The notes under the pieces are model-generated. The model had not been told where the DNA came from and searched no databases. It worked only from the letters and a program-made list of their open reading frames with translations. Both the position numbers and the translations under genes were made by a program. Shown piece after piece: positions 104 to 64,000 of a DNA stretch of 64,000 nt; the first letter of the stretch is position 1, and the number at the start of each line of letters is the position of its first letter. The DNA lies in IMG/VR virus record IMGVR_UViG_3300030329_006583, positions 1 to 64,000 of that record. One strand, 5' to 3'.

Positions 104-706
104 TTATTCAAAATCAATGTCAACCGTAAGTTTGACATGTAGTTTAGGGACACGTAATTGGTTGGCGAGATTGTGACTTTTTGCATCATCTGCATCCAAA
201 AACCAATCAGCATGACCTCGTTTATGCACATGTTTTAAAAAATAATCGTCTTTTTTACCGCAATTGCGTGCCATCATTGTATATACAATTTGATTCAAGC
301 GATCTGTTTCTTCTGCGCTGGCTTTTATCTCTTCCACTTTTCCGTATTCCATTGAGGAAACATCATGAATCATCACCGTTGCATTGGGATCCATGAATCT
401 CAAACCTTCCTCCCCAAATGAAAATAAAATTGCACCGCAACTCATTGCTTTCCCTTCCACAATGGTAGCCACCGGTACTTCAGAATGCTTAATCGCACTA
501 ATCATAGACATAAGGCTGTAAACCTGTCCCCCATAAGAATCAATAACCACCGGAATAACCTTTTGACCGGTGTTGTGGGCATGAGCCATGTCTAATGCAA
601 ACTTCTTAGCTGCGTCTTCATCAAATTTGTTAACCCTAATAATGGCAGGATTTTTTCTTAATTCATATTCTTTCAATAAAGGTGATACATTCATCGTCCA
701 ATGCAT
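104..706 (-). CDS. clpP: ClpP-family serine peptidase
   Basis: VIDSYGG motif, catalytic Ser in GKAMSCGA, His in PNATVMIHD, Asp in HADWFL; AGGAG SD. Confidence 0.9.
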   Translation of the reverse strand: MHWTMNVSPLLKEYELRKNPAIIRVNKFDEDAAKKFALDMAHAHNTGQKVIPVVIDSYGGQVYSLMSMISAIKHSEVPVATIVEGKAMSCGAILFSFGEEGLRFMDPNATVMIHDVSSMEYGKVEEIKASAEETDRLNQIVYTMMARNCGKKDDYFLKHVHKRGHADWFLDADDAKSHNLANQLRVPKLHVKLTVDIDFE

Positions 707-3700: not shown

Positions 3701-4104
3701 TCAAACCCCACCCCGCCGCGGCGTTTGGCAATTTGAACCAATTCCTGATCGGTCTTTAAAATACCTCCATATGAATCATAAGGTGATTCCAACACAAAGC
3801 AATTGGAAATAGATTGTACCTGGTATGGATTGCCAATTCCTGACATCGGTGATCCTTGGGGAATAACGTATGCAAAATCTTTAAAAAGACTATAAATCTC
3901 ATTTTCCGTTAAAGGATTGGGGTACTTAGATTCAATTCTGGCAAATTCTTGTGCTAACCGACGATGCATATCATCAGGAGTGATCTCATGTATATCACCC
4001 CCCTTGTCAGTTAATGCATATTTTGTTATAAAAACATTTGCCGCTAATTCATCACCATTAAAATACTGCGTTGATGCCTCAATCGCATTTTTGTAATCAA
4101 CCAT
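721..4104 (-). CDS. nrdJ: Class II (adenosylcobalamin-dependent) ribonucleotide reductase with an intein
   Basis: SNCFV, RRGGVGFD, RRGALM, TNP[intein]CGE, SCRL, RRTGLG, TTAPAGS, TTSGIEP, GCKGVTVYRDG; C-terminal TSCPD-like region and CPNC...CAAC Zn ribbon; no ATP cone seen. ORF opens at 4116 but ATG 4104 has a GGAG SD and overlaps the helicase stop. Confidence 0.9.
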   Translation of the reverse strand: MVDYKNAIEASTQYFNGDELAANVFITKYALTDKGGDIHEITPDDMHRRLAQEFARIESKYPNPLTENEIYSLFKDFAYVIPQGSPMSGIGNPYQVQSISNCFVLESPYDSYGGILKTDQELVQIAKRRGGVGFDISTIRPRGRTTANCARTTDGIEVFMDRFSNSCREVAQNGRRGALMLTISVHHPQISDFIKIKRDLTRVTGANISVRLSDEFMRAVERGKKVELRFPVDSVNPEVSEWVNARELWDDIIESAHACAEPGLLFWDNAKNLTPSDIYEEEGFGSQSTNPCVIGETLIAVADGRNAVSIKKLAEEVVDVPVYCTNPSTGRTEIRMGRNPRKTGEKKEVWELILDDGSSIVATPDHRILTKDLEYIKLKDLEPGTSLMPFNTFESNGYRQVCNAGADMKGGAKRNRRQYRLIHKFYHGETDCKKYAIHHADFDSKNDNIDNLVLMLHEDHRKLHAEKMMGINNPYHKMTDEWKKYFASHPGEANGRYSGYTNEELIEAGRSIFLESGKFTPTLWKKHAEKTGMPQFVGNKFRFGTWSNFKSAVINNHKVSSVKKIGFEDVYNITVDEHHNYNVITTFEEGYVKSSGVCVKNCGEIILSPYDSCRLMVVNLLSFVKEPFTPYAEFDYKKMSEVTQKAQRLMDDMIDLEIEQVEKILEKIENDPEPDTVKKIEKDLWLNIETMARLGRRTGLGVTGVGDALAALGIRYGSKRSIDVVESFYQTLSINAYRSSCIMAKERGPFEIHDHEKEKGHTFLERIWKAAPDILEMSKKYGRRNIALTTTAPAGSISTLTQTTSGIEPAYLLKYTRRKKLTENDIGGRVDFVDDSGDRWQEFEVYHHGFKQWMETTGLTQIEDSPYYKSTSNDIDWVNKVKVQAAAQKWICHAISNTTNLPADTTIDTVKDVYMTGWKTGCKGVTVYRDGCRTGVLVNSDNDAEFKTYDAPDRPDELRCHIHHVTIKGEAWTILVGLMGGRPYEVMGGLQNYLEIPKKYRKGKIIKHHYKTKNSRYDLRIGKNGDELAVKDVVAVFDNPNHAGFTRTISLALRHGAPINYIVEQLQKDKDADLFSFSKVIARVLKNYIQDGTKPGKAACPNCSAEDSLRYQEGCVSCAACGNSKCN
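2302..3231 (-). mobile_element. 310-aa intein with HNH homing endonuclease in the RNR active-site NP|CGE motif
   Basis: STNP|CVIGETLI ... VYNITVDEHHNY ... VCVKN|CGEII; removing it restores TNPCGE. Block B-like ATPDHRIL; internal IHHADFDSKNDNIDNLVLMLHEDHRKLH (HNH) followed by a NUMOD3-like segment. Confidence 0.92.
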
Positions 4105-5515
4105 TCTTTTCTCCAACCGCCTCTAGTTTAGTCACCTCTTTCCATTTTTCCTTTAAAAGGATTTTCATATCATTTTCGTCACTACGGACTGCCTCCTCCA
4201 ACGTTAATTCAGATTCATCAACAATCCGAATCATAGAGCGTGCAGTATCAATGTGGATGGGAAAAAGTAACCCATCCCTACCTGCGCGGTTTTTTGCCAC
4301 AAAAAGACGGCCGCCGCCCGTGGCCTTTTCAGTAGGCTTGCGAGAAAGTGATATCACCAAATCAGCAACCATGGCTTTACCGTATGCCTCCGACATATTT
4401 TCCAAACCTACAATTTCAGAATTAGCCGAATCACGATTAGCCTGACTAGCAGTCCATATGGGAATATTCATATCCATGGATAGATTACGTAATTCTTCAT
4501 AAATCAATTTCAATTCATGTCTCAAGGAATCATAACTTTTTGTAGAACGCATAATATCCGCGTAATCAATTATTATAATACTGGGAACAAACCCTCGTAA
4601 TAATAATTTTTCAATATGATTGCGAATTGTCACAACGCTGGCTGATCCTGTAGGGTATTCCTTAATGATCAGGCGACCTAATTCAGCATCTTCATATTTT
4701 TTCATTACCTCTTCTTTATGATCCTGAACTTCATTACTAGGAATATTACAAAGGTTTGAATCGTAACGAAGGCCTACTGCGTATTCACTCAGTTCAAACG
4801 TATAATGAACTACATTTTTACCATGTCGCATCGCATTGGCACCCATTGCAACCAGGTAATGACTTTTACCAACGCCGGTATTTGCTGTAACCACGCCCAA
4901 CTCCCCACGACCTAGGCCACCTTGTAAAATATCTTTTGCATCCAGGCGACCGATTCCAGTGGGACATACCTGCCTATTGACTTTAACAAACCGAGCGTCG
5001 GCATCTTCAAAAAAATCATGACCAGTAGAATGAGGCATGCCAACTGCCACCGCCGTCTTCATCAAATCCACCACACTCTCAAATTTGTCTGTTTGGATTA
5101 ATTCAACAGCCTGTTCCAGTGCCTCCTTGAACGCCTGTCTTTTACAAAAATCAAGCGATTTGTCTTTTACATACTCAATGTCATTAATATCCGGATTCAT
5201 TTTCATCCGATATAAAAACTCAACAATCTGATCTCTGAGGATTACGTCATCACCCTCACTAAGATCTTCTTTTATAATTGTCACTAGGAGTGACAAAGTG
5301 GGAAAACACTTGTATTTTTCATGGTACGTAAAATATTTTTCAGTCAAATAATGCAAATACCTAACATCAAAGAATTCAGGTACCATCACTTCACAAATTT
5401 GTGCTGCCCACCGATGATCTGTGAGCAACCCTTGAAATATTTTTTCCTGAAAAGATTTGCCATAGTGGGCAAAAGTGACATTAGTTCCAATAATATTTTC
5501 TTGCATAACCTGCAT
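4097..5515 (-). CDS. Replicative helicase (DnaB/T4 gp41-like, SF4)
   Basis: Walker A TANTGVGKS, Walker B IIIIDYAD, IWTASQANRD, VAKNRAG; DnaB-like N-terminal domain. Confidence 0.9.
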   Translation of the reverse strand: MQVMQENIIGTNVTFAHYGKSFQEKIFQGLLTDHRWAAQICEVMVPEFFDVRYLHYLTEKYFTYHEKYKCFPTLSLLVTIIKEDLSEGDDVILRDQIVEFLYRMKMNPDINDIEYVKDKSLDFCKRQAFKEALEQAVELIQTDKFESVVDLMKTAVAVGMPHSTGHDFFEDADARFVKVNRQVCPTGIGRLDAKDILQGGLGRGELGVVTANTGVGKSHYLVAMGANAMRHGKNVVHYTFELSEYAVGLRYDSNLCNIPSNEVQDHKEEVMKKYEDAELGRLIIKEYPTGSASVVTIRNHIEKLLLRGFVPSIIIIDYADIMRSTKSYDSLRHELKLIYEELRNLSMDMNIPIWTASQANRDSANSEIVGLENMSEAYGKAMVADLVISLSRKPTEKATGGGRLFVAKNRAGRDGLLFPIHIDTARSMIRIVDESELTLEEAVRSDENDMKILLKEKWKEVTKLEAVGEKNG

Positions 5516-6469
5516 CTATCTTACCACTGAATTTAAGGATGTGAAAAAAGAATCTGCGTCAAAGGTCTTGATAGATTCTCTCATTAAGATTCTCATGAAT
5601 CCGATTTTATTGCGACTTGGGGTAAAAGTATCGGTGGCGTATTCAATTTTTTTAATATGCTCACCTGATAAATTATGAATATCTAAAAACATCAATCTCC
5701 AATTACGTCTCGCAATGTCGTGGTTCTCATTAATTTCCTGGAATAATTTGAGTTTACTCCCACGAGATTTGTCCATGCTCATTTTAAGTATTTCATCCAC
5801 TGACACAAATTCCTCATCCCCCAATTGTGGGAATCTCTTTACCAAGGTCTTAAAACCGGCACCTTTAATACCTGGTAGCCCATCAGAAGGATCACCAACA
5901 AAACACCTGGCAGTACAAAAATTTTGCACCGACACGCCATATTTTTCCTTTACTGCGTCCATGGTGATAAACCTCTTTTGGCCGGGTGACCATTGTAATT
6001 TTTTTTCAGAAATTAATTGATAATAATCACGATCAGAGCTGGCGATTACACAATTATCTTGTCGAAATTTATTACGAATGAGATAACCTATCACATCATC
6101 AGCTTCGCAATCACCAACATAGATCTGGCCGGCTGGGGTGTGCTTCAATAATTCAATGCATAACGAAATTTGATAATTCCTATTTTCCACAGTATCCGGA
6201 ATATCATCACCATAATACCGGTTAAGCTTTTGAGGGCGGCGACCATTTTTATAATCTTTGAAAATAGCACGGCGGCGGGATGATCCCCCCCCTTCCCATA
6301 TTACAAATATTTGCCTAGGCTCAATTTTATCCGCTAATAACCGGATACCTTTCATAAACCCAACAATGCCACCTACATGATTACCGGTTTCACTCATGGA
6401 AGGATTCACAACAAAATGACGAGTAAAAAAATTTAAAGCATCAATCAACAGTATTGGGCGATCGTTCAC
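5516..6469 (-). CDS. 5'-3' exonuclease / flap endonuclease (T4 RNase H / Pol I N-terminal type)
   Basis: LLIDALN, YKNGR, CEADDVIG, SSDRDY, GDPSDGLPGIKGAG (helix-hairpin-helix); GTG start. Confidence 0.9.
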   Translation of the reverse strand: MNDRPILLIDALNFFTRHFVVNPSMSETGNHVGGIVGFMKGIRLLADKIEPRQIFVIWEGGGSSRRRAIFKDYKNGRRPQKLNRYYGDDIPDTVENRNYQISLCIELLKHTPAGQIYVGDCEADDVIGYLIRNKFRQDNCVIASSDRDYYQLISEKKLQWSPGQKRFITMDAVKEKYGVSVQNFCTARCFVGDPSDGLPGIKGAGFKTLVKRFPQLGDEEFVSVDEILKMSMDKSRGSKLKLFQEINENHDIARRNWRLMFLDIHNLSGEHIKKIEYATDTFTPSRNKIGFMRILMRESIKTFDADSFFTSLNSVVR

Positions 6470-6470
6470 A

Positions 6471-7658
6471 TCATGCCTCCGGATCTAGGATGGTGTCCCC
6501 TAATTGAATTGCCACTGAGCGTACCTCTTCATATGATTCTGGATCCACCATTGAATTGGAATCATCAGTTCTAACTAGTGTCAATTCCAATAATCCTTCA
6601 ACGTATGGTCCAAAAAATTCATCCTGCATAATATGTTCAAAATCTGCCTTATAAAATTTCTTCTCTTTTACAACTTCGCCTGTCTCTGCACTAGATATAG
6701 TGATGGTTTTCCAAGCCCCGCTTCCGGCGATGGCGACCTCACAACCTCCCACAACACCCGTACCTGCTTTTCTCAAAAGATCAAATACCTGTTCATGTTC
6801 CTTGATCCCTTTGCCAAAATGAATCTCAAAATTAATTGTTCTAAAAGGTGGGGACACTTTGTTTTTAATGGTCTTGGCGGAAACATGGATTCCAACCACT
6901 TCCTTGTCTTTATTTTCAATTTTTTGACCGGCACCTAATTTAATACGCACCGATGAATGAAAAGGAATAGCCTTTCCTCCAGGGGTAGTGGTAGGATCTC
7001 CATACATCACACCAATCTTAGTTCGAATCTGGTTAAGGCATACCATCAACACATTTTGATTTGCAATAATACCGGTAATCTTTCGCATTCCCTTGGAAAT
7101 TGCACGGGCCTGCAGCCCAATAGAATCTTTGTCATAATCACCAATCAATTCCGCCTTAGGAGAAGTGGCTGCCACGGAATCCCAGATAATTGTCACCGGA
7201 ACATCTTTATCCATGGCTTTTGCCTTTAAGATCGTCGATTCTGCAATTGCCAACACCTCTTCGGTACAATGGGTATCCACATACACAAACCGCTTGCTGA
7301 TATCAACCCCCAGCAAAGATAGGTTCTCTACGCTAGTTGCATTCTCTGTGTCGATATACACAACAATACCACCCATTTGCTGGGTTGATCTGGCAATTTG
7401 AATGGCTACATGTGATTTACCAATAGATGGGGGACCAAAAATCTCAATAATTCTTCCCTCTGGTAGTCCCCCGTCTCGCCTATTGGAAATAATATAATCC
7501 AATTGTTTGGAACCAGTGCTGATCCACCTTTTGACATGAGTAGGCGAAACATCATACGCCAAGTTATAAGCCACCTTGGAACCATGTTCCTTGTTAAGTG
7601 ACTGAATTAAATCTGACGTAAAATCATCTGATTCACCCTTTATTTTCTTCTTTGCCAT
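6471..7658 (-). CDS. recA: RecA/UvsX recombinase
   Basis: ISTGS, GLPEGRIIEIFGPPSIGKS (Walker A), YIDTEN, IIWDSVAA (Walker B), LNQIR, PGGKAIPFHSSVRI. Confidence 0.95.
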   Translation of the reverse strand: MAKKKIKGESDDFTSDLIQSLNKEHGSKVAYNLAYDVSPTHVKRWISTGSKQLDYIISNRRDGGLPEGRIIEIFGPPSIGKSHVAIQIARSTQQMGGIVVYIDTENATSVENLSLLGVDISKRFVYVDTHCTEEVLAIAESTILKAKAMDKDVPVTIIWDSVAATSPKAELIGDYDKDSIGLQARAISKGMRKITGIIANQNVLMVCLNQIRTKIGVMYGDPTTTPGGKAIPFHSSVRIKLGAGQKIENKDKEVVGIHVSAKTIKNKVSPPFRTINFEIHFGKGIKEHEQVFDLLRKAGTGVVGGCEVAIAGSGAWKTITISSAETGEVVKEKKFYKADFEHIMQDEFFGPYVEGLLELTLVRTDDSNSMVDPESYEEVRSVAIQLGDTILDPEA

Positions 7659-7677
7659 AAAACATCTCCTTCAGATT

Positions 7678-7706
7678 ATTCTAATAACACAATGTGTCGT
7701 GTTCAA
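7678..7706 (-). promoter_or_regulatory. Sigma70-type promoter for recA
   Basis: Minus strand TTGAAC (7706-7701), 17 nt, TAGAAT (7683-7678), then an AAGGAG SD. Confidence 0.65.
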
Positions 7707-7734
7707 AAAAAAGGCGGGTAGAAATCTACCCGCC
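7705..7734 (-). terminator. Rho-independent terminator after the SSB gene
   Basis: 9-bp stem GGCGGGTAG/CTACCCGCC with 4-nt loop and 8 U on the minus strand. Confidence 0.85.
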
Positions 7735-7757
7735 CCGATAAAACTTAAGGATTAGAC

Positions 7758-8537
7758 CTACAGATCTTCAAGATCCGCAAATGCTTCATCCAGGCTTCCA
7801 TATTTTGTGTTGGAAGTACCGGTAGTTGCAGTGTCCTTTGTTGTCGGAGTGCCCCGTGGAGTACCTACCTCACTGACGGTATCATCCCCATTCAGCCAAT
7901 CATTAACGATTTTCTCCAGCTCATCATAACTCTTCAATTGATACATATCATCAAGACTGGGGATGGATCCCATCCAATCCTTTGATTGAGTTTTCTTTTC
8001 ATGAAGAGGACTTTGCTTGCCTCTGGGGCGGACCTCTGTGGTTGCCCACTGTCTTCCCGGGGCTTTTGTACAAACCACTTTGACATCACGCCCATCGGTC
8101 GGATCTGTAATATCACCATAGTCTTCATCCAACATGATATTAAGGAGCGATTGATAAACTGTTTTACCAAAAGACCAAAGCCGGACCCCCTTGTCCTCTT
8201 CACCACGAACCACTACAGGTGCATAGCTTCGCATCTTGGGATATAGCTTTTTGGCCAGCTCATAAGATTCCTTGGAACCCTCATCACGAAGCTTGTTGAT
8301 CAATTCCTTGATGGGATCAGGCTTGCCAAACTGGTAAGGGGCCAAAAGGCCTGGGTTGTTTCCAATATTATAATAGAACCAAAGTTCCTTAAAGGGTTGT
8401 CCATCGTTGTCTGGAAATGATAGAAGTCGAACAGTCGCCTCTTCACCCTCTTGTGGGCGCCACAACATGTTCCTCTTTGAGTTATTGCCCGAAAGCTGAT
8501 TCAGCTTATTACGAATTGCATCAAAATCAATTGCCAT
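7758..8537 (-). CDS. Single-stranded DNA-binding protein (T4 gp32-like)
   Basis: LWRPQEG..TVRLL, PFKELWFYY, GVRLWSFGKTVY, DITDPTDGRD; acidic tail LDEAFADLEDL; position beside RecA. Start revised to ATG 8537 (GGAGG SD). Confidence 0.8.
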   Translation of the reverse strand: MAIDFDAIRNKLNQLSGNNSKRNMLWRPQEGEEATVRLLSFPDNDGQPFKELWFYYNIGNNPGLLAPYQFGKPDPIKELINKLRDEGSKESYELAKKLYPKMRSYAPVVVRGEEDKGVRLWSFGKTVYQSLLNIMLDEDYGDITDPTDGRDVKVVCTKAPGRQWATTEVRPRGKQSPLHEKKTQSKDWMGSIPSLDDMYQLKSYDELEKIVNDWLNGDDTVSEVGTPRGTPTTKDTATTGTSNTKYGSLDEAFADLEDL

Positions 8538-8546
8538 TTTTTCCTC

Positions 8547-8574
8547 CAAATTGCAAATTACAAATTGCAAAGTT
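8547..8574 (-). repeat. Four tandem 7-mers in the SSB leader
   Basis: + strand caaattg caaatta caaattg caaagtt, abutting the SD. Confidence 0.8.
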
Positions 8575-8591
8575 TAAATTAATATACATCA

Positions 8592-8620
8592 ACTATAGTA
8601 TTCAAAATTCAAATGTTCAA
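8592..8620 (-). promoter_or_regulatory. Sigma70-type promoter for the SSB gene
   Basis: TTGAAC (8620-8615), 17 nt, TATAGT (8597-8592). Confidence 0.65.
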
Positions 8621-8622
8621 GG

Positions 8623-8895
8623 TTACCATTTTTTTATTGGGCAGGATTTATTTGGTGCGAAAACATTCGCAGGAAAAGCACACCCACACTGATAACAAAG
8701 GGCTTTGACAATACCTTTATTAGAAACTTTGTTAGCATTACCTACCGGCCTTAAATAAGGGCACTCAATGCAAATATCGGCTCTTTTTTGTGCCAATTCT
8801 TTAATGGTTAGATCTAATTTATTTTGTTCCAAAGATGATTTAAAGTAATTTATCCACCCATCTTTAAAATCCAAGAGCCCTTTTAAATTAAACAT
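8623..8895 (-). CDS. Small Cys-rich putative Zn-binding protein
   Basis: CIECP ... CYQCGC ... CPIKKW; start revised to ATG 8895, overlapping the upstream stop. Confidence 0.6.
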   Translation of the reverse strand: MFNLKGLLDFKDGWINYFKSSLEQNKLDLTIKELAQKRADICIECPYLRPVGNANKVSNKGIVKALCYQCGCAFPANVFAPNKSCPIKKW

Positions 8896-9195: not shown

Positions 9196-9774
9196 TTACT
9201 TAGACTTGTGAATCACCGCCTGTTTAGCCTGCTGAAGGACTAGTGCCAATGAGGGTTCATGGCTAACATAAAAACGATTTTCCTCAAAGTGAGAACCGGA
9301 TGCCAATTGAATTGCCAACCACTCATCTTTAGTTAATTTAACCCCAAATTGCTGAAGGAGGAAAAGTGTTCGATGTGAAACAGACATTTTGTTGAGTTCT
9401 TCATTGTATTTATAATACTGGCCCAATTTATCCCGATGCCAATCTGAGTCTTGTTCCACAAAATAATCAAGTTCCAAATCACCAACCTTCCCTATTTCAT
9501 GCAACAAACCAACTTTAAGGATGGAAGCAACGGGAATTTTTAAATCATATGTTTTAGCCAAAGATCTCATTAAAGCCGTCACCTCCAAGGCATGTTCAAT
9601 CACACCCCCTGGATAGCACCCATATTGATCATTACGAGGTGAAGCAGGACATGCAACCAACCTCTGGCCTAGGCCTTCTAGAAGTAAATTCAAACCATCA
9701 TCACTAAGTCGCTTACATAGCTTTTCAAATTGATTCCAATTTTTTTCAATTTGTCCAATAGTATCTTCAGACAC
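9196..9774 (-). CDS. HD-superfamily (YhaM-like) protein, apparently degenerate
   Basis: PAS...YPGGVIEHALEV and LLHEIGKVG (HD to HE); later metal ligands not evident; GGAGGTG SD. Confidence 0.75.
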   Translation of the reverse strand: MSEDTIGQIEKNWNQFEKLCKRLSDDGLNLLLEGLGQRLVACPASPRNDQYGCYPGGVIEHALEVTALMRSLAKTYDLKIPVASILKVGLLHEIGKVGDLELDYFVEQDSDWHRDKLGQYYKYNEELNKMSVSHRTLFLLQQFGVKLTKDEWLAIQLASGSHFEENRFYVSHEPSLALVLQQAKQAVIHKSK

Positions 9775-9825: not shown

Positions 9826-10398
9826 TTATTCTGAGGATTTGTTTTGTTTGTTTTGCTTGGGCTTTTTCTTGGCCTTGGGTTTATTCCAACTAAATGGTTT
9901 TGGTGAAGCATAAACCAATAATGAGTTACCAACAATCTCCGATTGCACTGCATCATCAAAACGCAAAATGCCGGCATTTTTTGCGCCCCTCAATGTTTCC
10001 CTTACAAAAACCAGCGAATCCCTTGCCGGCATTTCTCCGGTTAGGGATATCCTCACCCCTTTTCGACCATAACGATCCTGGCGTTCATGGGTGTCCTTAT
10101 AAACATTCTCCATGGCGTCATTGCCTTCAATGGCTTGTGATAATAAATCAACCAACATTTCATGCTTATTATCACCACCGGCAGACTTAATGCCCAAATT
10201 CTTCATTAAGGCCATTGGATCTGAGTCAGAAAGTGCCTTTAATCCAGCCAACTCTTTTTTATAGCGGCCTGGCCCAGGACCCGTTGTTTGTTCTGTTTCT
10301 GAAGAAATAGTAATATTGGCAGGAGTTTCTTTATTTTCACCTTCTTGTTCAAGTAAAATATGGGCAATATGCCTTCTAACAAATTCTTCCATTTTCAT
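9826..10398 (-). CDS. Hypothetical protein
   Basis: 190 aa; GGGAGG SD; basic C-terminus; no family recognised. Confidence 0.65.
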   Translation of the reverse strand: MKMEEFVRRHIAHILLEQEGENKETPANITISSETEQTTGPGPGRYKKELAGLKALSDSDPMALMKNLGIKSAGGDNKHEMLVDLLSQAIEGNDAMENVYKDTHERQDRYGRKGVRISLTGEMPARDSLVFVRETLRGAKNAGILRFDDAVQSEIVGNSLLVYASPKPFSWNKPKAKKKPKQNKQNKSSE

Positions 10399-10432: not shown

Positions 10433-11632
10433 CTAAGACGAAATAGTCTCCAGGCTTAATGGAAAATTTCCTAAATTGTCAATATTTACCCCTTTATTAC
10501 ACAAATTTTCCAAGGTGGCAATATCCTCATTTTTTACCTCCATTATCAAAGCATCATGTAATAAAAAATACGGTAGAACTTCTATATTTTCTCGCGTTAA
10601 TATATTCAATAAATTATGAAATCCACAAATTGATGCATCCACGGCAGTGGATTGTATATAGTGATTATATAAAACATGTTCACTAGGTTTTTCATCATAT
10701 ATGATAGGACGCCCAAAATAATTGGTGATTCGTTGCTGCTTTTCCCAAGAATCTTTTAATTCTGCGTTGCGATGTGGGATATTAAAATATTTTTTAATTT
10801 TGTTGACAATTTCCACGGCATTTGAAGATGGCATTAATTTTTGTAATTTCCCAATCGATACCCCATATAAACCACACAAGGTAGCCAATTTAACCTGAGA
10901 TCTGGTAACATTGCCACCAAATATTTCATCCTTTAAATATGCATATACATCATCCTGCTGAATATTCTTGGATGCTGTCAACAAGGCAATGCGAGGTTCC
11001 AAGGAAATAAAATCAACCTGAACCACCTGTGAACCTGAATTGCGAGAAACAATTACCGATCTATATTTCGATGGTAATGTTAAAATTTGAGGACCTTTCT
11101 TTATGACTGCCCTGCCTGTGATGGTTTTGCAATAATCATAATAAGGTACATCAGGGGTTCCTTCAAACGTCTTTAAAGATGACGCCGGTGAAGCGGAAGA
11201 TTCATCGTTTAAAAAAGATTGTAATTTTTTATTGTCAATGGTGGCCGGCACTAATCGACCGACCAAATCAAATATTAGGCCATGCGTTTGTAAATAATTT
11301 GAGTCTTTTAAAGTAGTATATAATTCACATAATTGTTTCAATATAATTTTTAAATTTTTCTCATATAGTGTAGATGGCATTACATAATTCCACCTTATAT
11401 CTGACGGCTTACCCCAAATTAATTTTGCAGCACGTTGATATTTTATAGGTACCAATTGAGATATGTCGTATTTAAAGATTTTAGCCGCACCTTCCAACCC
11501 AGGTTGGTTACCCTTGTACCCCCAACCCCAACTACCTTCAGGCCTGTTATTAACCCATTGGTAGGTTAAACATTCTGGATCTACCAAGAGATGTTTTTCG
11601 GTGCCCAGATAAGATCTATCTAAACAAATCAT
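10433..11632 (-). CDS. polA: Minimal family-A DNA polymerase (polymerase domain only)
   Basis: KTITGR...PQILTLP, motif A VDFISLEPRI, motif B RSQVKLATLCGLYG, TNYFGRP, NHYIQSTAVD, motif C LLHDAL; only 399 aa; no exonuclease motifs seen. Confidence 0.8.
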   Translation of the reverse strand: MICLDRSYLGTEKHLLVDPECLTYQWVNNRPEGSWGWGYKGNQPGLEGAAKIFKYDISQLVPIKYQRAAKLIWGKPSDIRWNYVMPSTLYEKNLKIILKQLCELYTTLKDSNYLQTHGLIFDLVGRLVPATIDNKKLQSFLNDESSASPASSLKTFEGTPDVPYYDYCKTITGRAVIKKGPQILTLPSKYRSVIVSRNSGSQVVQVDFISLEPRIALLTASKNIQQDDVYAYLKDEIFGGNVTRSQVKLATLCGLYGVSIGKLQKLMPSSNAVEIVNKIKKYFNIPHRNAELKDSWEKQQRITNYFGRPIIYDEKPSEHVLYNHYIQSTAVDASICGFHNLLNILTRENIEVLPYFLLHDALIMEVKNEDIATLENLCNKGVNIDNLGNFPLSLETISS

Positions 11633-11665
11633 ATTTAAATATATTAATTGCGCCTAGATGTACAA

Positions 11666-14600
11666 CTATTGGGATGTCTCACCTTCACCCAATTTAGATA
11701 AAGCAAACATTGCATCCTGTATTGTTTGTGCCAGCGTGCTCCAACTTCCGTACGCCTCTACATTAAGTAACTCAAGTGATGTTGTAAACTGACCATTTTG
11801 AATACTATGGTTAACGCTAGTAACTGCATAAACGCCGTCCGCTGTGGTGCCCGTACCAAAATCTATAAAAAACCTTTGCCCCGCCGACACTAAAGGACAT
11901 CCCATTGTGGACAAACTCAATTTAAGAGGCAATATCTGGAGTGGCACACCTCCCCCAAAATTTCCCATAGGTTTAGATAGCGAATGGCCACCTGTGTCCT
12001 GCATTGACAATGCCGCCATTTTTCCATCATTCATAGTAGATAATTTTGCATCAATAATTGCAGTTGCATTACTGCCATAAATCAAACTAGGCATATTGTA
12101 GGATACCCATCTTTTCACAGCCGCAAGATTACCTTTTAATTGATAGGGAACATTACTTACTTCCGTTGGTTGACCTTGAACATCCAGGCTCGTTTTATAT
12201 CCCTCAATAATACCCACATCCTTTGCCATAGATAGGGCATTATTAAACGCTTCAGCGTGATTTGATGGATCATTTTTAGTTTGTGATGCAGCTGTCCCAA
12301 TTACACCCATTGTGGAATCCATGGCTGCCTGTAATATTTGTTCAATTGCAAGTTGCCCGTTGCATTGGGCATCATAAATATGAACCCTTACTAATGCCCT
12401 GGGTTCTGGATTTTCTGATTCATCATCTTTATTTTCCCTTAATTGTACCGTTTCAATTTTGTATTGTAACTGAGGTTGTTTAAACACTAAATTTTCTTTA
12501 GCATTTTCATTTTCAGGAGTTGCTGTTCCATAGGCGTCTGCCAATGCCCGCTTTTTGACATTGTGCACCACGGTATCGTCTTCCTGGGCCTTTTTATTAA
12601 GAGAATAGGAACCCTTCTTTTTGTCAAACGCATAAGGGCTATTAAACCCATATGGAAAATCAGCTGCAGCGCTCACAAAATACGTGCGTAATATGGACAT
12701 CAACCGGCTTACCGGTATATCTAACCCGCCCTTACCGGCTTTAGATAAAAGAAACTTAAATCTCTCAAGGTGAATAGGATATTGGGCCAAATTAAAATTT
12801 CTTACATAACTAGCCTTGGCATTTAATGAATAAAAAATCAATTGAACCTCTGAATACTGACCCAATCCAGCCATACTGGAACCCAAATATGTCAACAATA
12901 TTTTACCTAAAGAAACATAACGAGGAGAATGGCTCGTGGTGGAAATGGGCGGATCTATTATTTTTTGTTCACTCTCAATAGGTTTTAAAAAAGGATCATA
13001 CCCATTTAACAAACCTGCTTTGGCAGCCATCAATTCAGCCACTGTATTGCGATAACTGTTGAGCTCTGCTTCTGCCATAACTGTCTTTTTTACAACCGTA
13101 GCCTTCTTTTTATTCCAAATTTTTGTCCTTGTTTTTTTACCAAAAAGTTGCTCCAATAACTCACGCAATTTTGCCACATCAGTATCTTGGGGTTTGGAGG
13201 CCAAAAATTTCATAAGTTCTTGATTGGCCATAACATTTGTGGCCAGCGCGGCAGAAGTGGACGCTGCAACATTTAACCATTGTTTGCTAGCAATTGATTT
13301 TGCAACATCATCACCGGTCCCCATGATATATTTGCGTGTTCTATTAATCGCGGTGATGATATTATCGACTGCCTTGGTCGCTTGTTGGAATGCTGGGTTT
13401 CCATCGCTTAAAGTCATGCTTAAAGCACGTGCCGCTGAGGAGGACACTAAAGAAAGATTGATATTAACGCTGCCATCTTTTTCAAAATTATATGTAGAAT
13501 TAGAAACAATATACATTTGTTCCGAATTACACCCATTTAAAAATGTTGCGTATAAATTATCGGCACCCACATTATGACCTGCAACTTTGGCTATAGCCAT
13601 TTTAGGATCATTTGTTCCACTGGCACCTGCAGGATGCGACCACCCAAATTTAATCAATAATTGTGTATCATTATAAACACCGGGTTTGATCAAAGGCGTC
13701 AATAGGTGAAGCCTTGAGCGATCATAACAGGTGATGCTTAATTCACCGGTCATTATTTTCATCTGCAAATCGCGAGACTGCACACCAATTTTAAAGGAAT
13801 TAATTCCCGCCAATGGCCTAAACCTATCAATTATCGGAACAGGCCTAGAACCACCACCCGGCGGGAGATCGTCACCTGCGGTGCTGGTTGCTGGGTTTGA
13901 TGATGCACCCATAGGCGACAAGCTATCTGACATTTCCACGTAAGGTGTGGCGGACGTCATAGTCTGTGGGCTTAAAAACATTTCCATACCAGCAGTAGAA
14001 AATGAATACCCTCTCTCGTCACCCTTATAATCAATACCGACGGAGGCATTTTGTTCGTATGCAAATAAAGAATCCAGGATTTTTACATCAGCAGCGGTGG
14101 AAATTAAAAAATCAGGGGTAGTAGTATCTTTGATTTTTATTGACCCCAATATATCCTTTGTAATACCCATAGCCACCAGGCGATTATCGTGATTCAAGGG
14201 TTGGTGTGGCGTTATAATGGAAATATCCAACATGGGTTGGCACCGACTCATTTCCAGGGTTGGAATAGCATTCATAAACACCTGGGTGGCACCGGTGAGA
14301 TTTGAGCTAGGAGTCATCCTGCAATCAAACACTTGAATAACAGATAATTTTGGTGAGGTCGCTGAAGCGGGTGCTGTAGGTGTTTTATTAATATTGGAAC
14401 TAGTCTCGCTCTGTTGGGTTGCCACGTCGCCAAGCTGTTGCCGAATTGAAACTACCTCAAACTCGCCTGGACTTCCTTGGGTGGGGGTTTTTCCTTTCCG
14501 ACCCATTGGTTGAGTTCCTTGCTGATAATCCTCACTCTCCACCCCAACGTCGTTAGGTATATGTGCCCTGGTTATCGCTTTTGATGCCGCAAGCGATGAA

Positions 14601-50614: not shown

Positions 50615-50947
50615 TCACTTTATCCTATATGTTGGTTGATTCATGAGAAAGTTCACATGTTCATCCACTTGTTCCTTTGTTGGGCGCCATCCATCCATCC
50701 ACGCATGCCTATTGCCTTGTGCCCATTGAAACATGCAACTTTGACAACATTTATATTTATCGTAGGAAATTGTATCATTAATATCTTTCATCAAAAAACC
50801 GCATATGCTACAATCCACCACAAAATCAACTATGATCTCTTGACCTTTAATTATTTTAATGTTTGGAGATACTTCCTTTATTATTCTACCACCAAAATAT
50901 GTATTCCATTCCTCACTCATAAACAATCTTTGCATCCTTACCGACAC
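50615..50947 (-). CDS. Small CxxC...CxxC putative Zn-finger protein
   Basis: CSICGF ... CCQSC; overlaps the end of the SbcCD gene; exact start uncertain. Confidence 0.6.
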   Translation of the reverse strand: MSVRMQRLFMSEEWNTYFGGRIIKEVSPNIKIIKGQEIIVDFVVDCSICGFLMKDINDTISYDKYKCCQSCMFQWAQGNRHAWMDGWRPTKEQVDEHVNFLMNQPTYRIK

Positions 50948-54059: not shown

Positions 54060-54066
54060 ATTAATC

Positions 54067-55038
54067 CTAAAATATTGTACCACTCTTGATTTTGCTGATC
54101 ATGTGATAAAGCCGATCGGCGCGCTTCCAGGCAGGAGCGATTTTTCTTCTTTCTTCAAATATTTTCTTTGTCATGGAGCCTACATCATCATATCCTGTCA
54201 CATCCATCATTCTAACTGTTACACCAAATTCACTTAACAATTTCGCAAATTGATGTGATTTTTTTGCAGCATCCGGATCCAATGCCAATAAAACCGGTGT
54301 TTGGTTTTTAACAATTTTCTGAAATATTGCGTGATCCTGTTGAAAACTAGATCCTAGGATGCATGTGGCATTTTTATTACATTTCATTAAATCAAATGGA
54401 CCTTCAACTAAAGTTAATTCATTATCCCAGTCTATATTAAGATCATTAAAGATAACCTTTTTTTTAGGAATTTTAGAATTAAGATATTTCATAGCCGAAG
54501 TGACGTCAATTGTCCTTGCCACCGTGTAATTAAGTTCGCCTTCACTATCAAAAGAAGGCATAATCAAACGCCGACGATAGCGGCCACGCAAGCATGTACC
54601 TAATTTATAATACCACAGGTCTCTCTCTTCCAGATCACGAGAAACAGCGTATTTCAAAACAGCCAATGCATCAGGATCAATGCACCGATGGGAAACCACA
54701 TCCGTCAAAGGAACAAACCCGTTAGGTAATTCAACACTGAATTCAGGATCAATGTCATCATTCTTTGATAACCTTAGTTTTCCCCCAAAAACACTTAAAC
54801 ATTCATTAACCAAAGCCGGTTTGTATTTGCGGATTAAATTGACAGGTGCACGCCCCTTAACGTCACATACCCAACAATGATAATCACCTGTATCCAATTT
54901 AAAAACAAGCTTTTTTTTATTACTACCTTGCTTACAACAATTTGGGCATTTGAAGGCATAATTAATACCATCATAGCTTCGATCATTTTGCCCAAATGCC
55001 TTACGTAAAAAAGAAAGCCTGGAATTTACATCTGTCAT
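54067..55038 (-). CDS. DNA primase (T4 gp61/DnaG-like)
   Basis: N-terminal Zn finger CPNC...HCWVC; RRLIMPS; TOPRIM LVEGPFD...ALDPDA...DDVG. Confidence 0.85.
   Translation of the reverse strand: MTDVNSRLSFLRKAFGQNDRSYDGINYAFKCPNCCKQGSNKKKLVFKLDTGDYHCWVCDVKGRAPVNLIRKYKPALVNECLSVFGGKLRLSKNDDIDPEFSVELPNGFVPLTDVVSHRCIDPDALAVLKYAVSRDLEERDLWYYKLGTCLRGRYRRRLIMPSFDSEGELNYTVARTIDVTSAMKYLNSKIPKKKVIFNDLNIDWDNELTLVEGPFDLMKCNKNATCILGSSFQQDHAIFQKIVKNQTPVLLALDPDAAKKSHQFAKLLSEFGVTVRMMDVTGYDDVGSMTKKIFEERRKIAPAWKRADRLYHMISKIKSGTIF
54074..54082 (-). promoter_or_regulatory. Extended -10 promoter candidate for sbcCD
   Basis: TGG-TACAAT, 14 nt before the ATG; no clear -35. Confidence 0.4.
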
Positions 55039-55044
55039 CTTATA

Positions 55045-55073
55045 AAGATAAACTATTTTTTTTATATGTTCAA
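55045..55073 (-). promoter_or_regulatory. Sigma70-type promoter for primase, probably leaderless
   Basis: TTGAAC (55073-55068), 17 nt, TATCTT (55050-55045), 6 nt, ATG; no SD. Confidence 0.55.
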
Positions 55074-63997: not shown

Positions 63998-64000
63998 CGG

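What the first reader, a model, noticed from the sequence alone, without database searches (positions are those of the whole stretch)
10433..11632. 399-aa exonuclease-less family-A polymerase with Leu at the 762-equivalent position
Seen: motifs A, B and C are present, with both catalytic Asp. Counting from the motif-B Lys (K-L-A-T-L-C-G-L-Y-G) puts Leu at the E. coli 762 position. Motif C is HDA, there is no 3'-5' exonuclease domain and only about 160 aa precede the polymerase core. A separate 5'-3' exonuclease lies 4 kb away. Known: phage PolAs are grouped as Phe/Tyr/Leu762 and normally carry proofreading. Inference: too small to be the replicase; perhaps a gap-filling partner of the flap nuclease (a split Pol I) or a specialised/mutagenic polymerase.
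Basis: partly seen in the sequence, partly recalled or inferred. Interest (0 to 1): 0.6.

Follow-up and report, generated by a model that had tools for sequence, protein, structure and literature searches.

The report
Minimal exonuclease-less PolA beside phage DnaE
This gene in a marine jumbo phage encodes a stripped-down family-A DNA polymerase with no proofreading domain, most likely a Pol I-type helper to a separate DnaE replicase, and it belongs to a large virus-only subfamily that I did not find described in the held literature.

Summary
It encodes 399 aa and passes Pfam DNA_pol_A. An AlphaFold2 model (pLDDT 94) matches Klenow, Taq and Bst large fragments at Z 21-23. The TGR motif and motifs A and B are intact, and both catalytic Asp are present. 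Position 762 is Leu (Leu/Ile/Met across the family). Motif C is HDA, with Ala in 76 of 82 related loci. There is no exonuclease domain. Residues 1-45 form a small beta stub that aligns with the first strand of the exonuclease domain and has no conserved acidic residues.

The window is part of a 267-kb marine myovirus contig. That contig also encodes a 1200-aa DnaE1-type Pol III alpha with a PHP domain, DnaB, a DnaG-like primase, gp32-type SSB, RecA and a Pol I-type 5' nuclease. It has no PolB and no detectable DEDD exonuclease.

At least 548 IMG/VR loci carry the same roughly 350-410-aa protein in the same gene order. DnaE co-occurs in the larger relatives. A distant cultured relative, Microcystis phage Mel-JY01, pairs a degenerate copy with PolB.

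Best reading: an accessory, non-proofreading, Pol I-like gap-filling polymerase, not the replicase. It is a new variant of a known kind. Its function is inferred, not shown.

The parts
10433..11632 (-). Mini-PolA gene, 399 aa (P0001): a complete family-A polymerase domain (thumb, palm, fingers) with no 3'-5' exonuclease domain.
   Evidence: ORF and translation. PF00476 above its cut-off. AF2 pLDDT 94.2. Z 21-23 to Bst, Taq, Klenow and T7.
11498..11632 (-). N-terminal beta stub, aa 1-45. It is structurally equivalent to the first strands of the PolA exonuclease domain and lacks conserved Exo I-III acidic residues. The 347-352-aa subfamily does not have it.
   Evidence: Strands at aa 2-4, 14-18, 23-27 and 35-37. 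Model residue 1 aligns to Klenow 351, Taq 305, Bst 316 and T7 residue 2 (only the ends of the aligned ranges are reported). D5 is not conserved and the short forms start at about aa 46.
11111..11119 (-). TGR motif (T172, G173, R174; equivalent to Klenow R668).
   Evidence: G173 and R174 are invariant in 50 homologs. Coordinates.
10991..11014 (-). Motif A, DFISLEPR. It holds catalytic D207 (Klenow D705) and E212 (Klenow E710, the steric gate).
   Evidence: D207, E212 and P213 are invariant. Aligned to Taq DYSQIELR.
10862..10903 (-). Motif B, RSQVKLATLCGLYG: R244, K248, L252 (position 762), Y256, G257.
   Evidence: R244, K248, Y256 and G257 are invariant. Position 252 is L 28 / I 22 and L 51 / I 22 / M 5 in 82 loci. 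Aligned to Taq RRAAKTINFGVLYG.
10550..10558 (-). Motif C, HDA: H359, catalytic D360, and A361 in place of the usual Glu (Klenow E883).
   Evidence: H and D are present in 49 of 50, Ala in 41 of 50. Ala in 76 of 82 loci.
9826..10398 (-). Conserved 190-aa ORF directly downstream (P0091), function unknown. It is not an exonuclease and no family or fold could be assigned.
   Evidence: A homolog lies within -32..+44 bp of the pol stop codon in 45 of 81 loci, and 727 bp away in one more. No hit in Pfam, PHROGs or NCBIfam. AF2 pLDDT 89; best PDB match Z 6.5, which is in the noise range.
9196..9774 (-). HD/HDIG-domain phosphohydrolase, a conserved neighbour.
   Evidence: PF01966 at 22.4 bits. TIGR00277. 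Present in 66 of 82 loci.
7758..8570 (-). gp32-type single-strand DNA-binding protein.
   Evidence: PF08804 at 41 bits and phrog_1192. Present in 74 of 82 loci.
6471..7658 (-). RecA/UvsX-type recombinase.
   Evidence: PF00154 at 216 bits. Present in 71 of 82 loci.
5516..6469 (-). Pol I-type 5'-3' exonuclease / flap endonuclease. This is the proposed other half of a split Pol I.
   Evidence: PF02739 at 92 bits plus PF01367. Best NCBIfam matches are the N-terminal 256 positions of the Pol I models: NF004397 at 113.7 bits and TIGR00593 at 103.5 bits. Present in 68 of 82 loci.
4097..5515 (-). DnaB-type replicative helicase.
   Evidence: PF03796 at 69 bits and phrog_19 at E 1.7e-70.
54067..55038 (-). 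DnaG-like DNA primase with an N-terminal zinc ribbon. It shows that the phage has its own primase.
   Evidence: phrog_47 at E 8.8e-33. TIGR01391 at E 1e-7. Weak PF08275 hit.

Best explanation
P0001 is a catalytically competent, non-proofreading, minimal family-A DNA polymerase. It has a complete thumb-palm-fingers polymerase domain and a vestigial stub of about 45 aa where the 3'-5' exonuclease domain used to be.

It is not the replicase of this marine jumbo myovirus. That role falls to the DnaE1-type Pol III alpha with a PHP domain encoded elsewhere on the same contig.

The mini-PolA most likely does the polymerase half of the Pol I job:
- short-patch, template-directed gap filling when RNA primers are removed from Okazaki fragments by the separately encoded Pol I-type 5' nuclease;
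- repair or recombination-associated synthesis with the neighbouring SSB and RecA, and with the Fpg/Nei glycosylase.

Shown here: the fold, the motifs, the absence of an exonuclease domain, the presence of DnaE, conserved gene order across hundreds of loci, and restriction to viruses.

Inferred: enzymatic activity, and the gap-filling role together with the flap nuclease.
For: 1. PolA identity and completeness.
- PF00476 scores above its cut-off.
- AF2 pLDDT 94.2.
- VIA-align Z 21-23.4 over model residues 1-399 to Bst, Taq, Klenow, T7, Pol nu and Pol theta.

2. The active site is under selection.
- Invariant across about 30%-identical homologs: G173, R174, D207, E212, R244, K248, Y256, G257, R308, Q327 and S328. 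H359 and D360 are present in 49 of 50.

3. No exonuclease.
- ORF length is 387-416 aa in every complete locus and never longer.
- Five DEDD Pfam models find nothing in the 267-kb record.
- The conserved downstream ORF shows no exonuclease fold.

4. A separate replicase exists.
- DnaE, 1200 aa, carries PHP, NTPase, finger and HhH domains.
- It scores 582 bits to the DnaE1 model against 337 bits to the error-prone DnaE2 model.
- The PHP motif residues HxH, D, H, E, H, C and DxH are visible in the sequence.
- There is no PolB.

5. Co-occurrence.
- DnaE is present in 8 of 13 large relatives, including all five at 40-87% completeness. PolB is present in none of the 13.
- Mel-JY01 has PolB plus a syntenic mini-PolA homolog.

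6. Pol I logic.
- The flap nuclease matches the Pol I N-terminal domain best.
- It lies in the same conserved module, in the order pol - (P0091) - HD - SSB - RecA - FEN - DnaB.

7. Precedents from the literature.
- An engineered Klenow sub-fragment without the exonuclease domain is folded and active (PMC6457538).
- About half of bacterial Pol I orthologs have disrupted 3'-5' exonuclease motifs, and the 5' nuclease is the indispensable part (PMC12926913).
Against: - No biochemical or expression data. No RNA run holds the locus.
- Motif C is HDA rather than HDE. From my own knowledge, the equivalent Klenow E883 belongs to the carboxylate triad and its loss lowers activity, so the enzyme may be slow or may use metals differently.
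- The flap nuclease lies 4 kb away, not next to the polymerase. No interaction between the two was tested.
- No DNA ligase, sliding clamp or clamp loader was detected in the record. The maturation pathway is therefore incomplete as seen, although the record is only 78% complete.
- In Mel-JY01 the homolog has lost the equivalents of R754, E710 and H881. In some lineages the gene is thus kept for something other than standard catalysis.
Confidence: 0.6

Rival explanations
1. It is a true replisome polymerase that shares the fork with DnaE, for example by extending primers or synthesising one strand. This would be analogous to the two-polymerase forks of Bacillus (PolC and DnaE).
For: - It is the first gene of the conserved replication module, next to SSB, RecA, DnaB and RNR.
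- It is retained in hundreds of loci.
- No clamp or clamp loader for DnaE was found, so the replisome is unconventional.
- Iyer et al. proposed two cooperating polymerases for other jumbo phages (PMC7824862).
Against: - It has no proofreading, no recognisable processivity element and no detectable partner.
- The replicase is swapped between relatives (DnaE, or PolB in Mel-JY01) while the mini-PolA stays, and in Mel-JY01 it degenerates. That pattern fits an accessory enzyme better than a core fork enzyme.
Confidence: 0.14
2. It is a specialised repair, translesion or mutagenic polymerase. It would resemble Pol nu or Pol theta in lacking proofreading, and would be used for UV or oxidative damage in surface-ocean phage DNA rather than for Okazaki-fragment maturation.
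For: - No exonuclease domain, and an altered motif C (HDA).
- The genome encodes Fpg/Nei glycosylase, an Mre11-Rad50 fusion, RuvC and RecA.
- The bacterial auxiliary PolAs APEX and CHEAP also carry Leu at position B3, and an APEX deletion pointed to a DNA-repair role (PMC10201439).
- Pol nu is among the good profile and fold matches.
Against: - The residues that check fidelity and the minor groove are strictly conserved: the equivalents of R668, Q849, H881, E710 and Y766.
- There are no lesion-bypass insertions like those of Pol theta or Pol nu in this compact 399-aa model.
- The gene sits in the replication module, not with the glycosylase, which is about 250 kb away.
Confidence: 0.14
3. It has lost efficient catalysis and serves mainly as a DNA-binding or scaffolding component of the replication/recombination machinery.
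For: - The third carboxylate of motif C is Ala across the family.
- The Mel-JY01 homolog keeps the gene in the same position but has lost several substrate-binding residues.
Against: In the marine lineage both catalytic Asp and all dNTP- and primer-binding residues are invariant over roughly 70% sequence divergence. That is hard to explain without catalysis.
Confidence: 0.07
4. Together with the conserved downstream 190-aa protein it forms a priming complex, like the exonuclease-truncated CCPol with MP of staphylococcal SCC elements.
For: - The exonuclease domain is truncated.
- A small conserved ORF follows the pol gene, overlapping or tightly abutting it in 45 of 81 loci.
- CCPol-MP has priming activity (PMC10201439).
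Against: - The phage has its own DnaG-like primase.
- The small ORF is absent from 35 of 81 loci, where the HD gene often follows directly.
- It has no MP-like beta-barrel. The model is an alpha/beta domain with no informative match.
Confidence: 0.03

Closest known systems
Bacterial DNA polymerase I large fragment (Klenow, KlenTaq, Bst BF), Pol I / PolA1 group
   Same: - Same fold: Z 21-23.4 with 350-387 residues aligned.
- Best profile scores among solved structures: Taq 60 bits, Bst 56, Klenow 52.
- Same TGR, A and B motifs.
- Taq and Bst also lack proofreading.
- The accompanying flap nuclease is Pol I-type.
- The inferred gap-filling role is the same.
   Different: - No 5' nuclease domain fused to it; that domain is a separate gene 4 kb away.
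- The roughly 190-aa exonuclease or exonuclease-like domain is reduced to a stub of about 45 aa.
- Motif C is HDA, not HDE.
- Position 762 is Leu/Ile, not Phe.
- Sequence identity is only 13-16%.
- No hit to the Pol I equivalog models.
- The family is restricted to viruses.
S-SBP1-like split T7-type PolA (cluster #5 of Czernecki et al. 2023, PMC10201439)
   Same: A stand-alone phage PolA polymerase domain without an exonuclease domain in the same polypeptide.
   Different: - There, an exo gene lies directly upstream, produced by a recent frameshift, and is predicted to re-associate with pol. Position B3 is Tyr, and the enzyme is the replicase.
- Here, no exonuclease gene is detectable anywhere. 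The upstream gene is a 1082-aa protein that closes the tail-gene block; it has no family assignment, only a sub-threshold tail-protein match. Position B3 is Leu/Ile. A DnaE replicase is present.
CCPol-MP of staphylococcal SCC elements (near the CHEAP cluster; PMC10201439)
   Same: A PolA with a truncated exonuclease domain, Leu-type B3 relatives, a small conserved gene next to it, and a helicase in the neighbourhood.
   Different: - CCPol keeps three exonuclease helices that bind the beta-barrel protein MP, and it primes DNA synthesis.
- Here the remnant is a beta stub. The neighbouring ORF is optional (46 of 81 loci) and is not a beta-barrel. A DnaG-like primase is present.
HoLaMa, an engineered Klenow sub-fragment without the exonuclease domain (PMC6457538)
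   Same: A polymerase domain alone. It shows that such a protein folds and polymerises, with about 10-fold lower catalytic efficiency.
   Different: HoLaMa is artificial. P0001 is a natural, conserved family with its own motif C variant and N-terminal stub.
Leu762 virioplankton PolAs (Schmidt 2014; Nasko 2018, PMC6302109) and the Leu-B3 clusters SPO2-like, KPP25-like, phiJL001-like, APEX and CHEAP (PMC10201439)
   Same: A non-aromatic residue at position 762 / B3. Marine viral origin for some of them. APEX and CHEAP are auxiliary enzymes rather than replicases, and APEX 1 has an inactive exonuclease.
   Different: - Those enzymes are 600 aa or longer and carry an exonuclease domain.
- None is reported as a 350-410-aa form with HDA.
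- The best NCBIfam hit of P0001 is to an actinobacterial bifunctional exonuclease/polymerase model, at only 33 bits against a cut-off of 389.

Membership tests
Family A DNA polymerase (PF00476, Klenow-fold polymerase domain) | Sequence match above the curated Pfam threshold | tested here: met
   39.8 bits against a cut-off of 34.3, E 3.6e-10. The precomputed PF00476 assignment is present in nearly all 90 homologs.
Family A DNA polymerase (PF00476, Klenow-fold polymerase domain) | Right-hand thumb/palm/fingers fold superimposable on solved PolAs | tested here: met
   AF2 pLDDT 94.2. Foldseek E 1e-13. VIA-align Z 23.4, rmsd 4.4-4.7 Å, 360-380 residues aligned.
Family A DNA polymerase (PF00476, Klenow-fold polymerase domain) | TGR motif; motif A Asp; motif B R..K...x...YG; motif C Asp | tested here: met
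   G173, R174, D207, R244, K248, Y256 and G257 are invariant; T172 is present in 47 of 50 and D360 in 49 of 50. Alignment to Taq.
Family A DNA polymerase (PF00476, Klenow-fold polymerase domain) | Glu following the motif C Asp (HDE) | tested here: not met
   Ala in P0001, in 41 of 50 homologs and in 76 of 82 loci. This is a variant feature. It does not remove the protein from the family, but it sets the subfamily apart.
Family A DNA polymerase (PF00476, Klenow-fold polymerase domain) | Template-directed DNA polymerase activity | not testable with these tools
   Needs a primer-extension assay.
Bacterial Pol I ortholog (PolA1; TIGR00593 / NF004397) | N-terminal 5' nuclease domain fused to the polymerase | tested here: not met
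   The 5' nuclease is a separate 317-aa gene at 5516-6469.
Bacterial Pol I ortholog (PolA1; TIGR00593 / NF004397) | Central 3'-5' exonuclease or exonuclease-like domain of about 190 aa | tested here: not met
   Only aa 1-45 precede the polymerase domain. PF01612 and PF22619 give no hit.
Bacterial Pol I ortholog (PolA1; TIGR00593 / NF004397) | Score above the equivalog cut-off | tested here: not met
   The Pol I models do not hit P0001 at all. The best NCBIfam hit is NF011538 at 33 bits against a cut-off of 389.
   Only about 45 aa are available. D5 is followed by R and S and is not conserved in the family. There are no invariant acidic residues before position 165.
Split exo/pol T7-like PolA (S-SBP1 type) | Adjacent gene encoding the matching 3'-5' exonuclease | tested here: not met
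   Upstream lies a 1082-aa protein at the end of the tail-gene block with only sub-threshold tail-protein matches. Downstream lies a 190-aa alpha/beta protein of unknown fold. No DEDD hit anywhere in the genome.
Split exo/pol T7-like PolA (S-SBP1 type) | Tyr at position B3 (762) | tested here: not met
   Leu, Ile or Met.
CCPol-MP primase-polymerase (SCC elements) | Small beta-barrel partner (MP) bound to the remaining exonuclease helices | tested here: inconclusive
   The neighbouring ORF P0091 is an alpha/beta domain, not a barrel, and is absent from 35 of 81 loci. The complex prediction gave no answer, which is not evidence either way.
CCPol-MP primase-polymerase (SCC elements) | Replaces a conventional primase | tested here: not met
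   A DnaG-like primase is encoded at 54067-55038.
Leu762 group of virioplankton PolAs | Leu at the E. coli 762 position | tested here: met
   L252 aligns to Taq F667. The family has L, I or M at this position.
Leu762 group of virioplankton PolAs | Membership in one of the described Leu-B3 clades by phylogeny | not tested
   No reference set of the 19 clusters was at hand, and identity to any solved PolA is 11-17%.

The most novel reading that the evidence does not exclude
These 350-410-aa proteins form a distinct, virus-only PolA subfamily outside the 19 described clusters, and would be the smallest natural family-A polymerases. They are also an obligatory second polymerase of a DnaE-based phage replisome: a clamp-less, two-polymerase fork in which the exonuclease-less PolA extends primers or D-loops and hands over to DnaE. 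On this reading the family-wide HDA motif C marks an altered catalytic or metal-use mechanism.
Probability: 0.15. Interest if true: 0.7.

Novelty: new variant of a known kind. Interest (0 to 1): 0.5.

Why it matters
- Family-A polymerases without any proofreading domain were only recently noted as rarities: the split T7-like pol and CCPol. This finding shows a large natural family of them, with at least 548 IMG/VR loci and 29 of the 30 nearest ESM Atlas clusters, each of 50 or more members. The family is confined to big marine and freshwater myoviruses.
- It gives a concrete, testable picture of how DnaE-carrying jumbo phages may be organised. The picture is a bacterial-style toolkit (DnaE, DnaB, DnaG-like primase) in which Pol I is broken into separate genes and its exonuclease domain has been deleted. 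DnaE is the signature gene of the poorly understood PGC_A group of marine jumbo phages (PMC9123017).
- A naturally minimal, well-folded 350-400-aa PolA with an unusual HDA motif and Leu/Ile at position 762 would be useful for studying what the exonuclease domain and the third carboxylate contribute. It may also be useful as a compact enzyme scaffold.
- The annotation of a cultured phage, Mel-JY01, can be improved. Its mini-PolA homolog is labelled 'hypothetical protein' and its flap nuclease is labelled 'DNA polymerase I'.

Tried and rejected
- Plus-strand reading of 10433-11632 is full of stop codons. The gene is on the minus strand.
- phmmer of the single sequence against PDB found nothing. 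tblastn against 50,697 phage records found nothing at E 1e-3. The profile search and a relaxed tblastn were needed.
- Complex prediction of P0001 with the conserved downstream protein P0091 returned 'no answer' (score 0.00). This is not evidence for or against binding. I did not test the pair with the flap nuclease or with SSB, because only one job is allowed.
- P0091 as the missing exonuclease or as an MP-like partner: no family hit, no Atlas lead, no viral-structure match, and best PDB Z 6.5, within the noise range. Rejected as an exonuclease; its function stays unknown.
- The upstream 1082-aa ORF as a carrier of the exonuclease domain: it has only a weak tail-protein hit at its C-terminus, and it follows the tape-measure, sheath, tube and hub genes. 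Rejected.
- 'No primase, therefore PolA primes': Toprim_2 and Prim-Pol searches were blank, but PHROGs and NCBIfam identify a primase at 54067-55038. Rejected.
- Searches of the 267-kb record for a sliding clamp, NAD- or ATP-dependent ligase, PolB, and PF13482 / PF10108 / PF22619 exonucleases were all blank. The record is 78% complete, so absence is not proven.
- The genome-contig scan with the 50-sequence alignment failed for lack of a conserved stretch. It worked with a 12-sequence alignment.
- One mistyped call and two malformed literature queries returned errors.
- The promoter/terminator scan around the gene found nothing above shuffled expectation.
No alternative genetic code was needed.
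- I did not attempt a phylogeny against the 19 published PolA clusters. No reference set was available and identity is about 15%.
Full report
**What is there**

The interval 10433..11632 holds one open reading frame on the minus strand (ATG start, 399 aa, P0001). The plus strand is full of stop codons. Pfam assigns it to DNA_pol_A at 39.8 bits against a cut-off of 34.3, covering aa 181-382 and profile positions 126-357. PHROGs assigns it to the general DNA polymerase family.

A 50-sequence alignment of homologs (A1) shows which positions are fixed over sequences only about 30% identical:
- G173 and R174 of the TGR motif;
- D207 and E212 of motif A;
- R244, K248, Y256 and G257 of motif B;
- R308, Q327 and S328;
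- H359 and D360 of motif C, each present in 49 of 50.

A profile alignment to Taq polymerase puts K248 on Taq K663 and L252 on Taq F667, the residue equivalent to E. coli F762. Across the family the position is Leu, Ile or Met. The residue after the motif C Asp is Ala in 76 of 82 independent loci. Motif coordinates were verified by translation.

**Architecture**

An AlphaFold2 model built on the alignment is very confident (mean pLDDT 94.2, pTM 0.92). Foldseek and VIA-align match it over its whole length to Bst, Taq, Klenow, T7, Pol nu and Pol theta polymerases (Z 21-23.4, 350-387 residues aligned, 11-17% identity).

The profile alignment to Bst starts inside the thumb (profile position 120). 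It runs to the C-terminus without large gaps. The 'about 160 aa before the core' are therefore the ordinary N-terminal palm and thumb. What is missing is the exonuclease domain.

The first 45 residues form a small beta meander. In every structural alignment, model residue 1 is paired with the first strand of the exonuclease or exonuclease-like domain: Klenow 351, Taq 305, Bst 316, T7 residue 2 (only the ends of the ranges are reported). I read this stub as a relic of the exonuclease domain. It has no conserved acidic residue (D5 is variable), and a 347-352-aa subfamily lacks it altogether.

**The genome around it**

The window is the first 64 kb of a 267,118-bp IMG/VR virus record. CheckV estimates it at 78% complete. 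G+C is 40%, and about 270 of 294 ORFs lie on one strand.

Upstream of the gene lies a myovirus tail block: tape measure, two sheath paralogs, tube and hub. It is followed by two large proteins with no family assignment.

Downstream lies a replication/recombination module:
- a conserved 190-aa ORF (P0091);
- an HD phosphohydrolase;
- gp32-type SSB;
- RecA/UvsX;
- a 5'-3' exonuclease;
- DnaB;
- an intein-containing ribonucleotide reductase.

Further along the window are a DnaG-like primase, a RuvC-like resolvase, an Mre11-Rad50 fusion, the large terminase and a T4-type portal.

Six-frame family searches of the whole record gave these results:
- exactly one PolA;
- no PolB;
- one family-C polymerase, a 1200-aa DnaE with PHP, NTPase, finger and HhH domains at G000 255274..258876.

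The DnaE scores 582 bits to the DnaE1 model and 337 bits to the error-prone DnaE2 model. Its PHP motif residues appear intact by eye; whether the PHP domain is active is an inference.

Five DEDD-exonuclease models found nothing: PF01612, PF00929, PF13482, PF22619 and PF10108. No clamp or ligase was found either. Because the record is incomplete, these absences are provisional.

**Relatives**

The word-based protein search returned 90 homologs. Nearly all are 345-431 aa (four shorter entries run from 225 to 327 aa), and they sit on contigs up to 289 kb.

A pattern scan of IMG/VR found at least 548 loci encoding a relative. In the 82 loci I examined, complete ORFs are 387-416 aa and never longer.

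In the ESM Atlas, 29 of the 30 nearest clusters carry the PolA assignment. The clusters shown are virus-dominated (95-100%) and about 400 aa long. The one cluster without a Pfam label is a 349-aa viral group.

Only two hits appeared among 185,579 prokaryotic species genomes. Both are on short contigs of Bacteroidota MAGs. The family is therefore viral.

Gene order is conserved across about 30% identity. The neighbours found in the 82 loci are listed below.

| Neighbour | Loci with it (of 82) |
|---|---|
| Upstream 1082-aa protein | 72 |
| HD phosphohydrolase | 66 |
| SSB | 74 |
| RecA | 71 |
| Flap nuclease | 68 |
| DnaB | 60 |

The short subfamily shows the same order.

DnaE is present in 8 of 13 large IMG/VR relatives, including all five estimated at 40-87% complete. 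PolB is present in none of them.

By portal similarity, the nearest cultured phages are:
- Microcystis phage Mel-JY01, 43% identity;
- Flavobacterium phage immuto, 39%;
- Rhodothermus phage RM378, 34%.

Mel-JY01 has the same module: gp32, RecA, a flap nuclease mislabelled 'DNA polymerase I', and a helicase. In the syntenic position it has a 408-aa 'hypothetical protein' that is a remote homolog of the family (hhalign probability 97.6%). That copy has lost the equivalents of R754, E710 and H881. The phage carries PolB and no DnaE.

Phage immuto instead has a full-length 777-aa PolA. RM378 has no match to the family profile.

So the replicase differs between these related phages, while the mini-PolA, where it is present, accompanies a replicase rather than standing in for one.

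**How it most likely works**

The phage brings a bacterial-style toolkit: a DnaE1-like polymerase, DnaB and a DnaG-like primase. In bacteria such a replisome depends on Pol I to remove RNA primers and fill the gaps.

Here the Pol I functions are present as separate genes. The flap nuclease scores best against the N-terminal 256 positions of the bacterial Pol I models (113.7 and 103.5 bits). It scores only 71-76 bits against stand-alone 5' nuclease models. P0001 supplies a complete polymerase domain.

The strict conservation of several residue classes argues for accurate, DNA-templated dNTP incorporation (inference from established Klenow and Taq biochemistry):
- both metal-binding Asp;
- the dNTP-binding Arg, Lys and Tyr;
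- the steric-gate Glu;
- the minor-groove readers (equivalents of R668, Q849 and H881).

Lack of proofreading is compatible with a Pol I-type job. Roughly half of bacterial Pol I orthologs have disrupted exonuclease motifs (PMC12926913). An engineered Klenow without its exonuclease domain is folded and active, at about 10-fold lower efficiency (PMC6457538).

I therefore rate 'accessory gap-filling/repair polymerase working beside DnaE, functionally a split Pol I' at about 0.6. Identity, architecture, context and co-occurrence are shown. Activity, and partnership with the flap nuclease, are inferred.

**Rivals**

- A genuine second fork polymerase: 0.14.
- A specialised translesion or mutagenic enzyme: 0.14.
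- A catalytically weakened scaffold, suggested by HDA and by the degenerate Mel-JY01 copy: 0.07.
- A CCPol-MP-like priming complex with the downstream ORF: 0.03. It is weakened by the presence of a primase and by the absence of that ORF from 35 of 81 loci.

The downstream ORF is tightly linked to the pol gene. In 45 of 81 loci its start lies within -32..+44 bp of the pol stop codon, and in one more locus it lies 727 bp away. It has no family hit and no informative fold match (pLDDT 89, best Z 6.5). The single complex prediction gave no answer, which counts neither way.

**Comparison with what is known**

PolAs without an exonuclease domain are known in two settings (PMC10201439).
- The S-SBP1-like T7-type pol has its exonuclease encoded by the adjacent gene after a recent fission.
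- The staphylococcal CCPol keeps three exonuclease helices, binds MP, and primes DNA synthesis.

The present family differs from both:
- no exonuclease gene is detectable;
- it has a beta-stub remnant, or none at all;
- position B3 is Leu, Ile or Met;
- motif C is HDA across the family;
- it is always 350-416 aa;
- it is linked to DnaE-carrying large myoviruses.

DnaE (PF07733) is already known as the signature of the mostly metagenomic PGC_A group of marine jumbo phages (PMC9123017). It is also the signature of 'group 3.2' jumbo phages (PMC7824862). Neither paper, nor the virioplankton PolA surveys (PMC6302109), mentions a companion mini-PolA. My literature searches found no description of it.

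The protein works like the polymerase domain of Pol I, but it fails the membership tests for a Pol I ortholog: no fused 5' nuclease, no exonuclease domain, and no equivalog score. I file it as a family-A polymerase of a new, minimal variant. Whether it forms a separate cluster in the published 19-cluster scheme was not tested.

**Occurrence**

The stretch is held by marine metagenome runs from four studies, two of which may be its own source. No RNA run holds it. Host hints are weak:
- three Bacteroidota MAG bins contain family members;
- there is no Shine-Dalgarno-like sequence upstream of the gene.

**Verdict**

- Observation: confirmed, with the strand corrected to minus.
- Novelty: new variant of a known kind.
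- Interest: about 0.5.

Noticed in passing
window 9826-10398 (-): A conserved 190-aa ORF (P0091) lies directly after the pol gene, overlapping or abutting it in 45 of 81 related loci. It has a confident alpha/beta model (pLDDT 89) but no family, Atlas or PDB match (best Z 6.5). Function unknown.
   Followed up: yes
L087 (Microcystis phage Mel-JY01, PP395634.1) 7581-8807 and 12976-14016: In this cultured phage, a 408-aa protein annotated 'hypothetical protein' is a remote, partly degenerate homolog of the mini-PolA (motif C YDA; equivalents of R754 and E710 lost). The gene annotated 'DNA polymerase I' is only the 5'-3' exonuclease. The phage carries PolB and no DnaE.
   Followed up: partly
window 721-4116 (-): The ribonucleotide reductase large subunit (1131 aa) is interrupted by an intein with an HNH endonuclease. 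Relatives have uninterrupted genes of 812-828 aa.
   Followed up: no
window 25939-29226 and 29265-32546 (-): Two tandem tail-sheath paralogs of about 1095 aa each, far longer than usual sheath proteins. The sheath homology is confined to their C-terminal third.
   Followed up: no
window 50913-54083 (-): A single 1056-aa ORF fuses an Mre11/SbcD-type phosphoesterase to a Rad50/SbcC-type ATPase. It is followed by a DnaG-like primase (54067-55038) and a RuvC-like resolvase (55062-55631).
   Followed up: partly
outside the window: L005 5265-6257, 14976-15710, 12887-13690 (G000 252383-253375, 262094-262828, 260005-260808): The phage encodes both ThyA and ThyX thymidylate synthases. It also encodes an Fpg/Nei-type DNA glycosylase close to the DnaE gene.
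   Followed up: no
whole record G000 (267 kb); window 62945-64000 and beyond: Roughly 270 of 294 ORFs lie on one strand. A 2250-aa ORF (62945..69697) runs out of the window. No sliding clamp, clamp loader or DNA ligase was detected in the 78%-complete record.
   Followed up: partly
L003 19807-21188 and L004 19635-21203; window 104-706 (-): Relatives carry NifU-type and Fe-S cluster assembly genes and a ClpP-like protease right after the RNR gene. The window's first ORF is the ClpP-like (head maturation) protease.
   Followed up: no
window 11633-11665 (upstream of the pol start); L089, L090: There is no Shine-Dalgarno-like sequence before the pol start codon; the leader is A/T-rich. The only hits in prokaryotic genome bins are short contigs in Bacteroidota MAGs. 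Together these are a weak hint of a Bacteroidota host.
   Followed up: partly
L095 7855-10188 (Flavobacterium phage immuto, MW353176.1): This structurally related cultured phage (portal 39% identical) has a full-length 777-aa PolA instead of DnaE plus mini-PolA. The replicase type has therefore been exchanged repeatedly within this group of myoviruses.
   Followed up: partly
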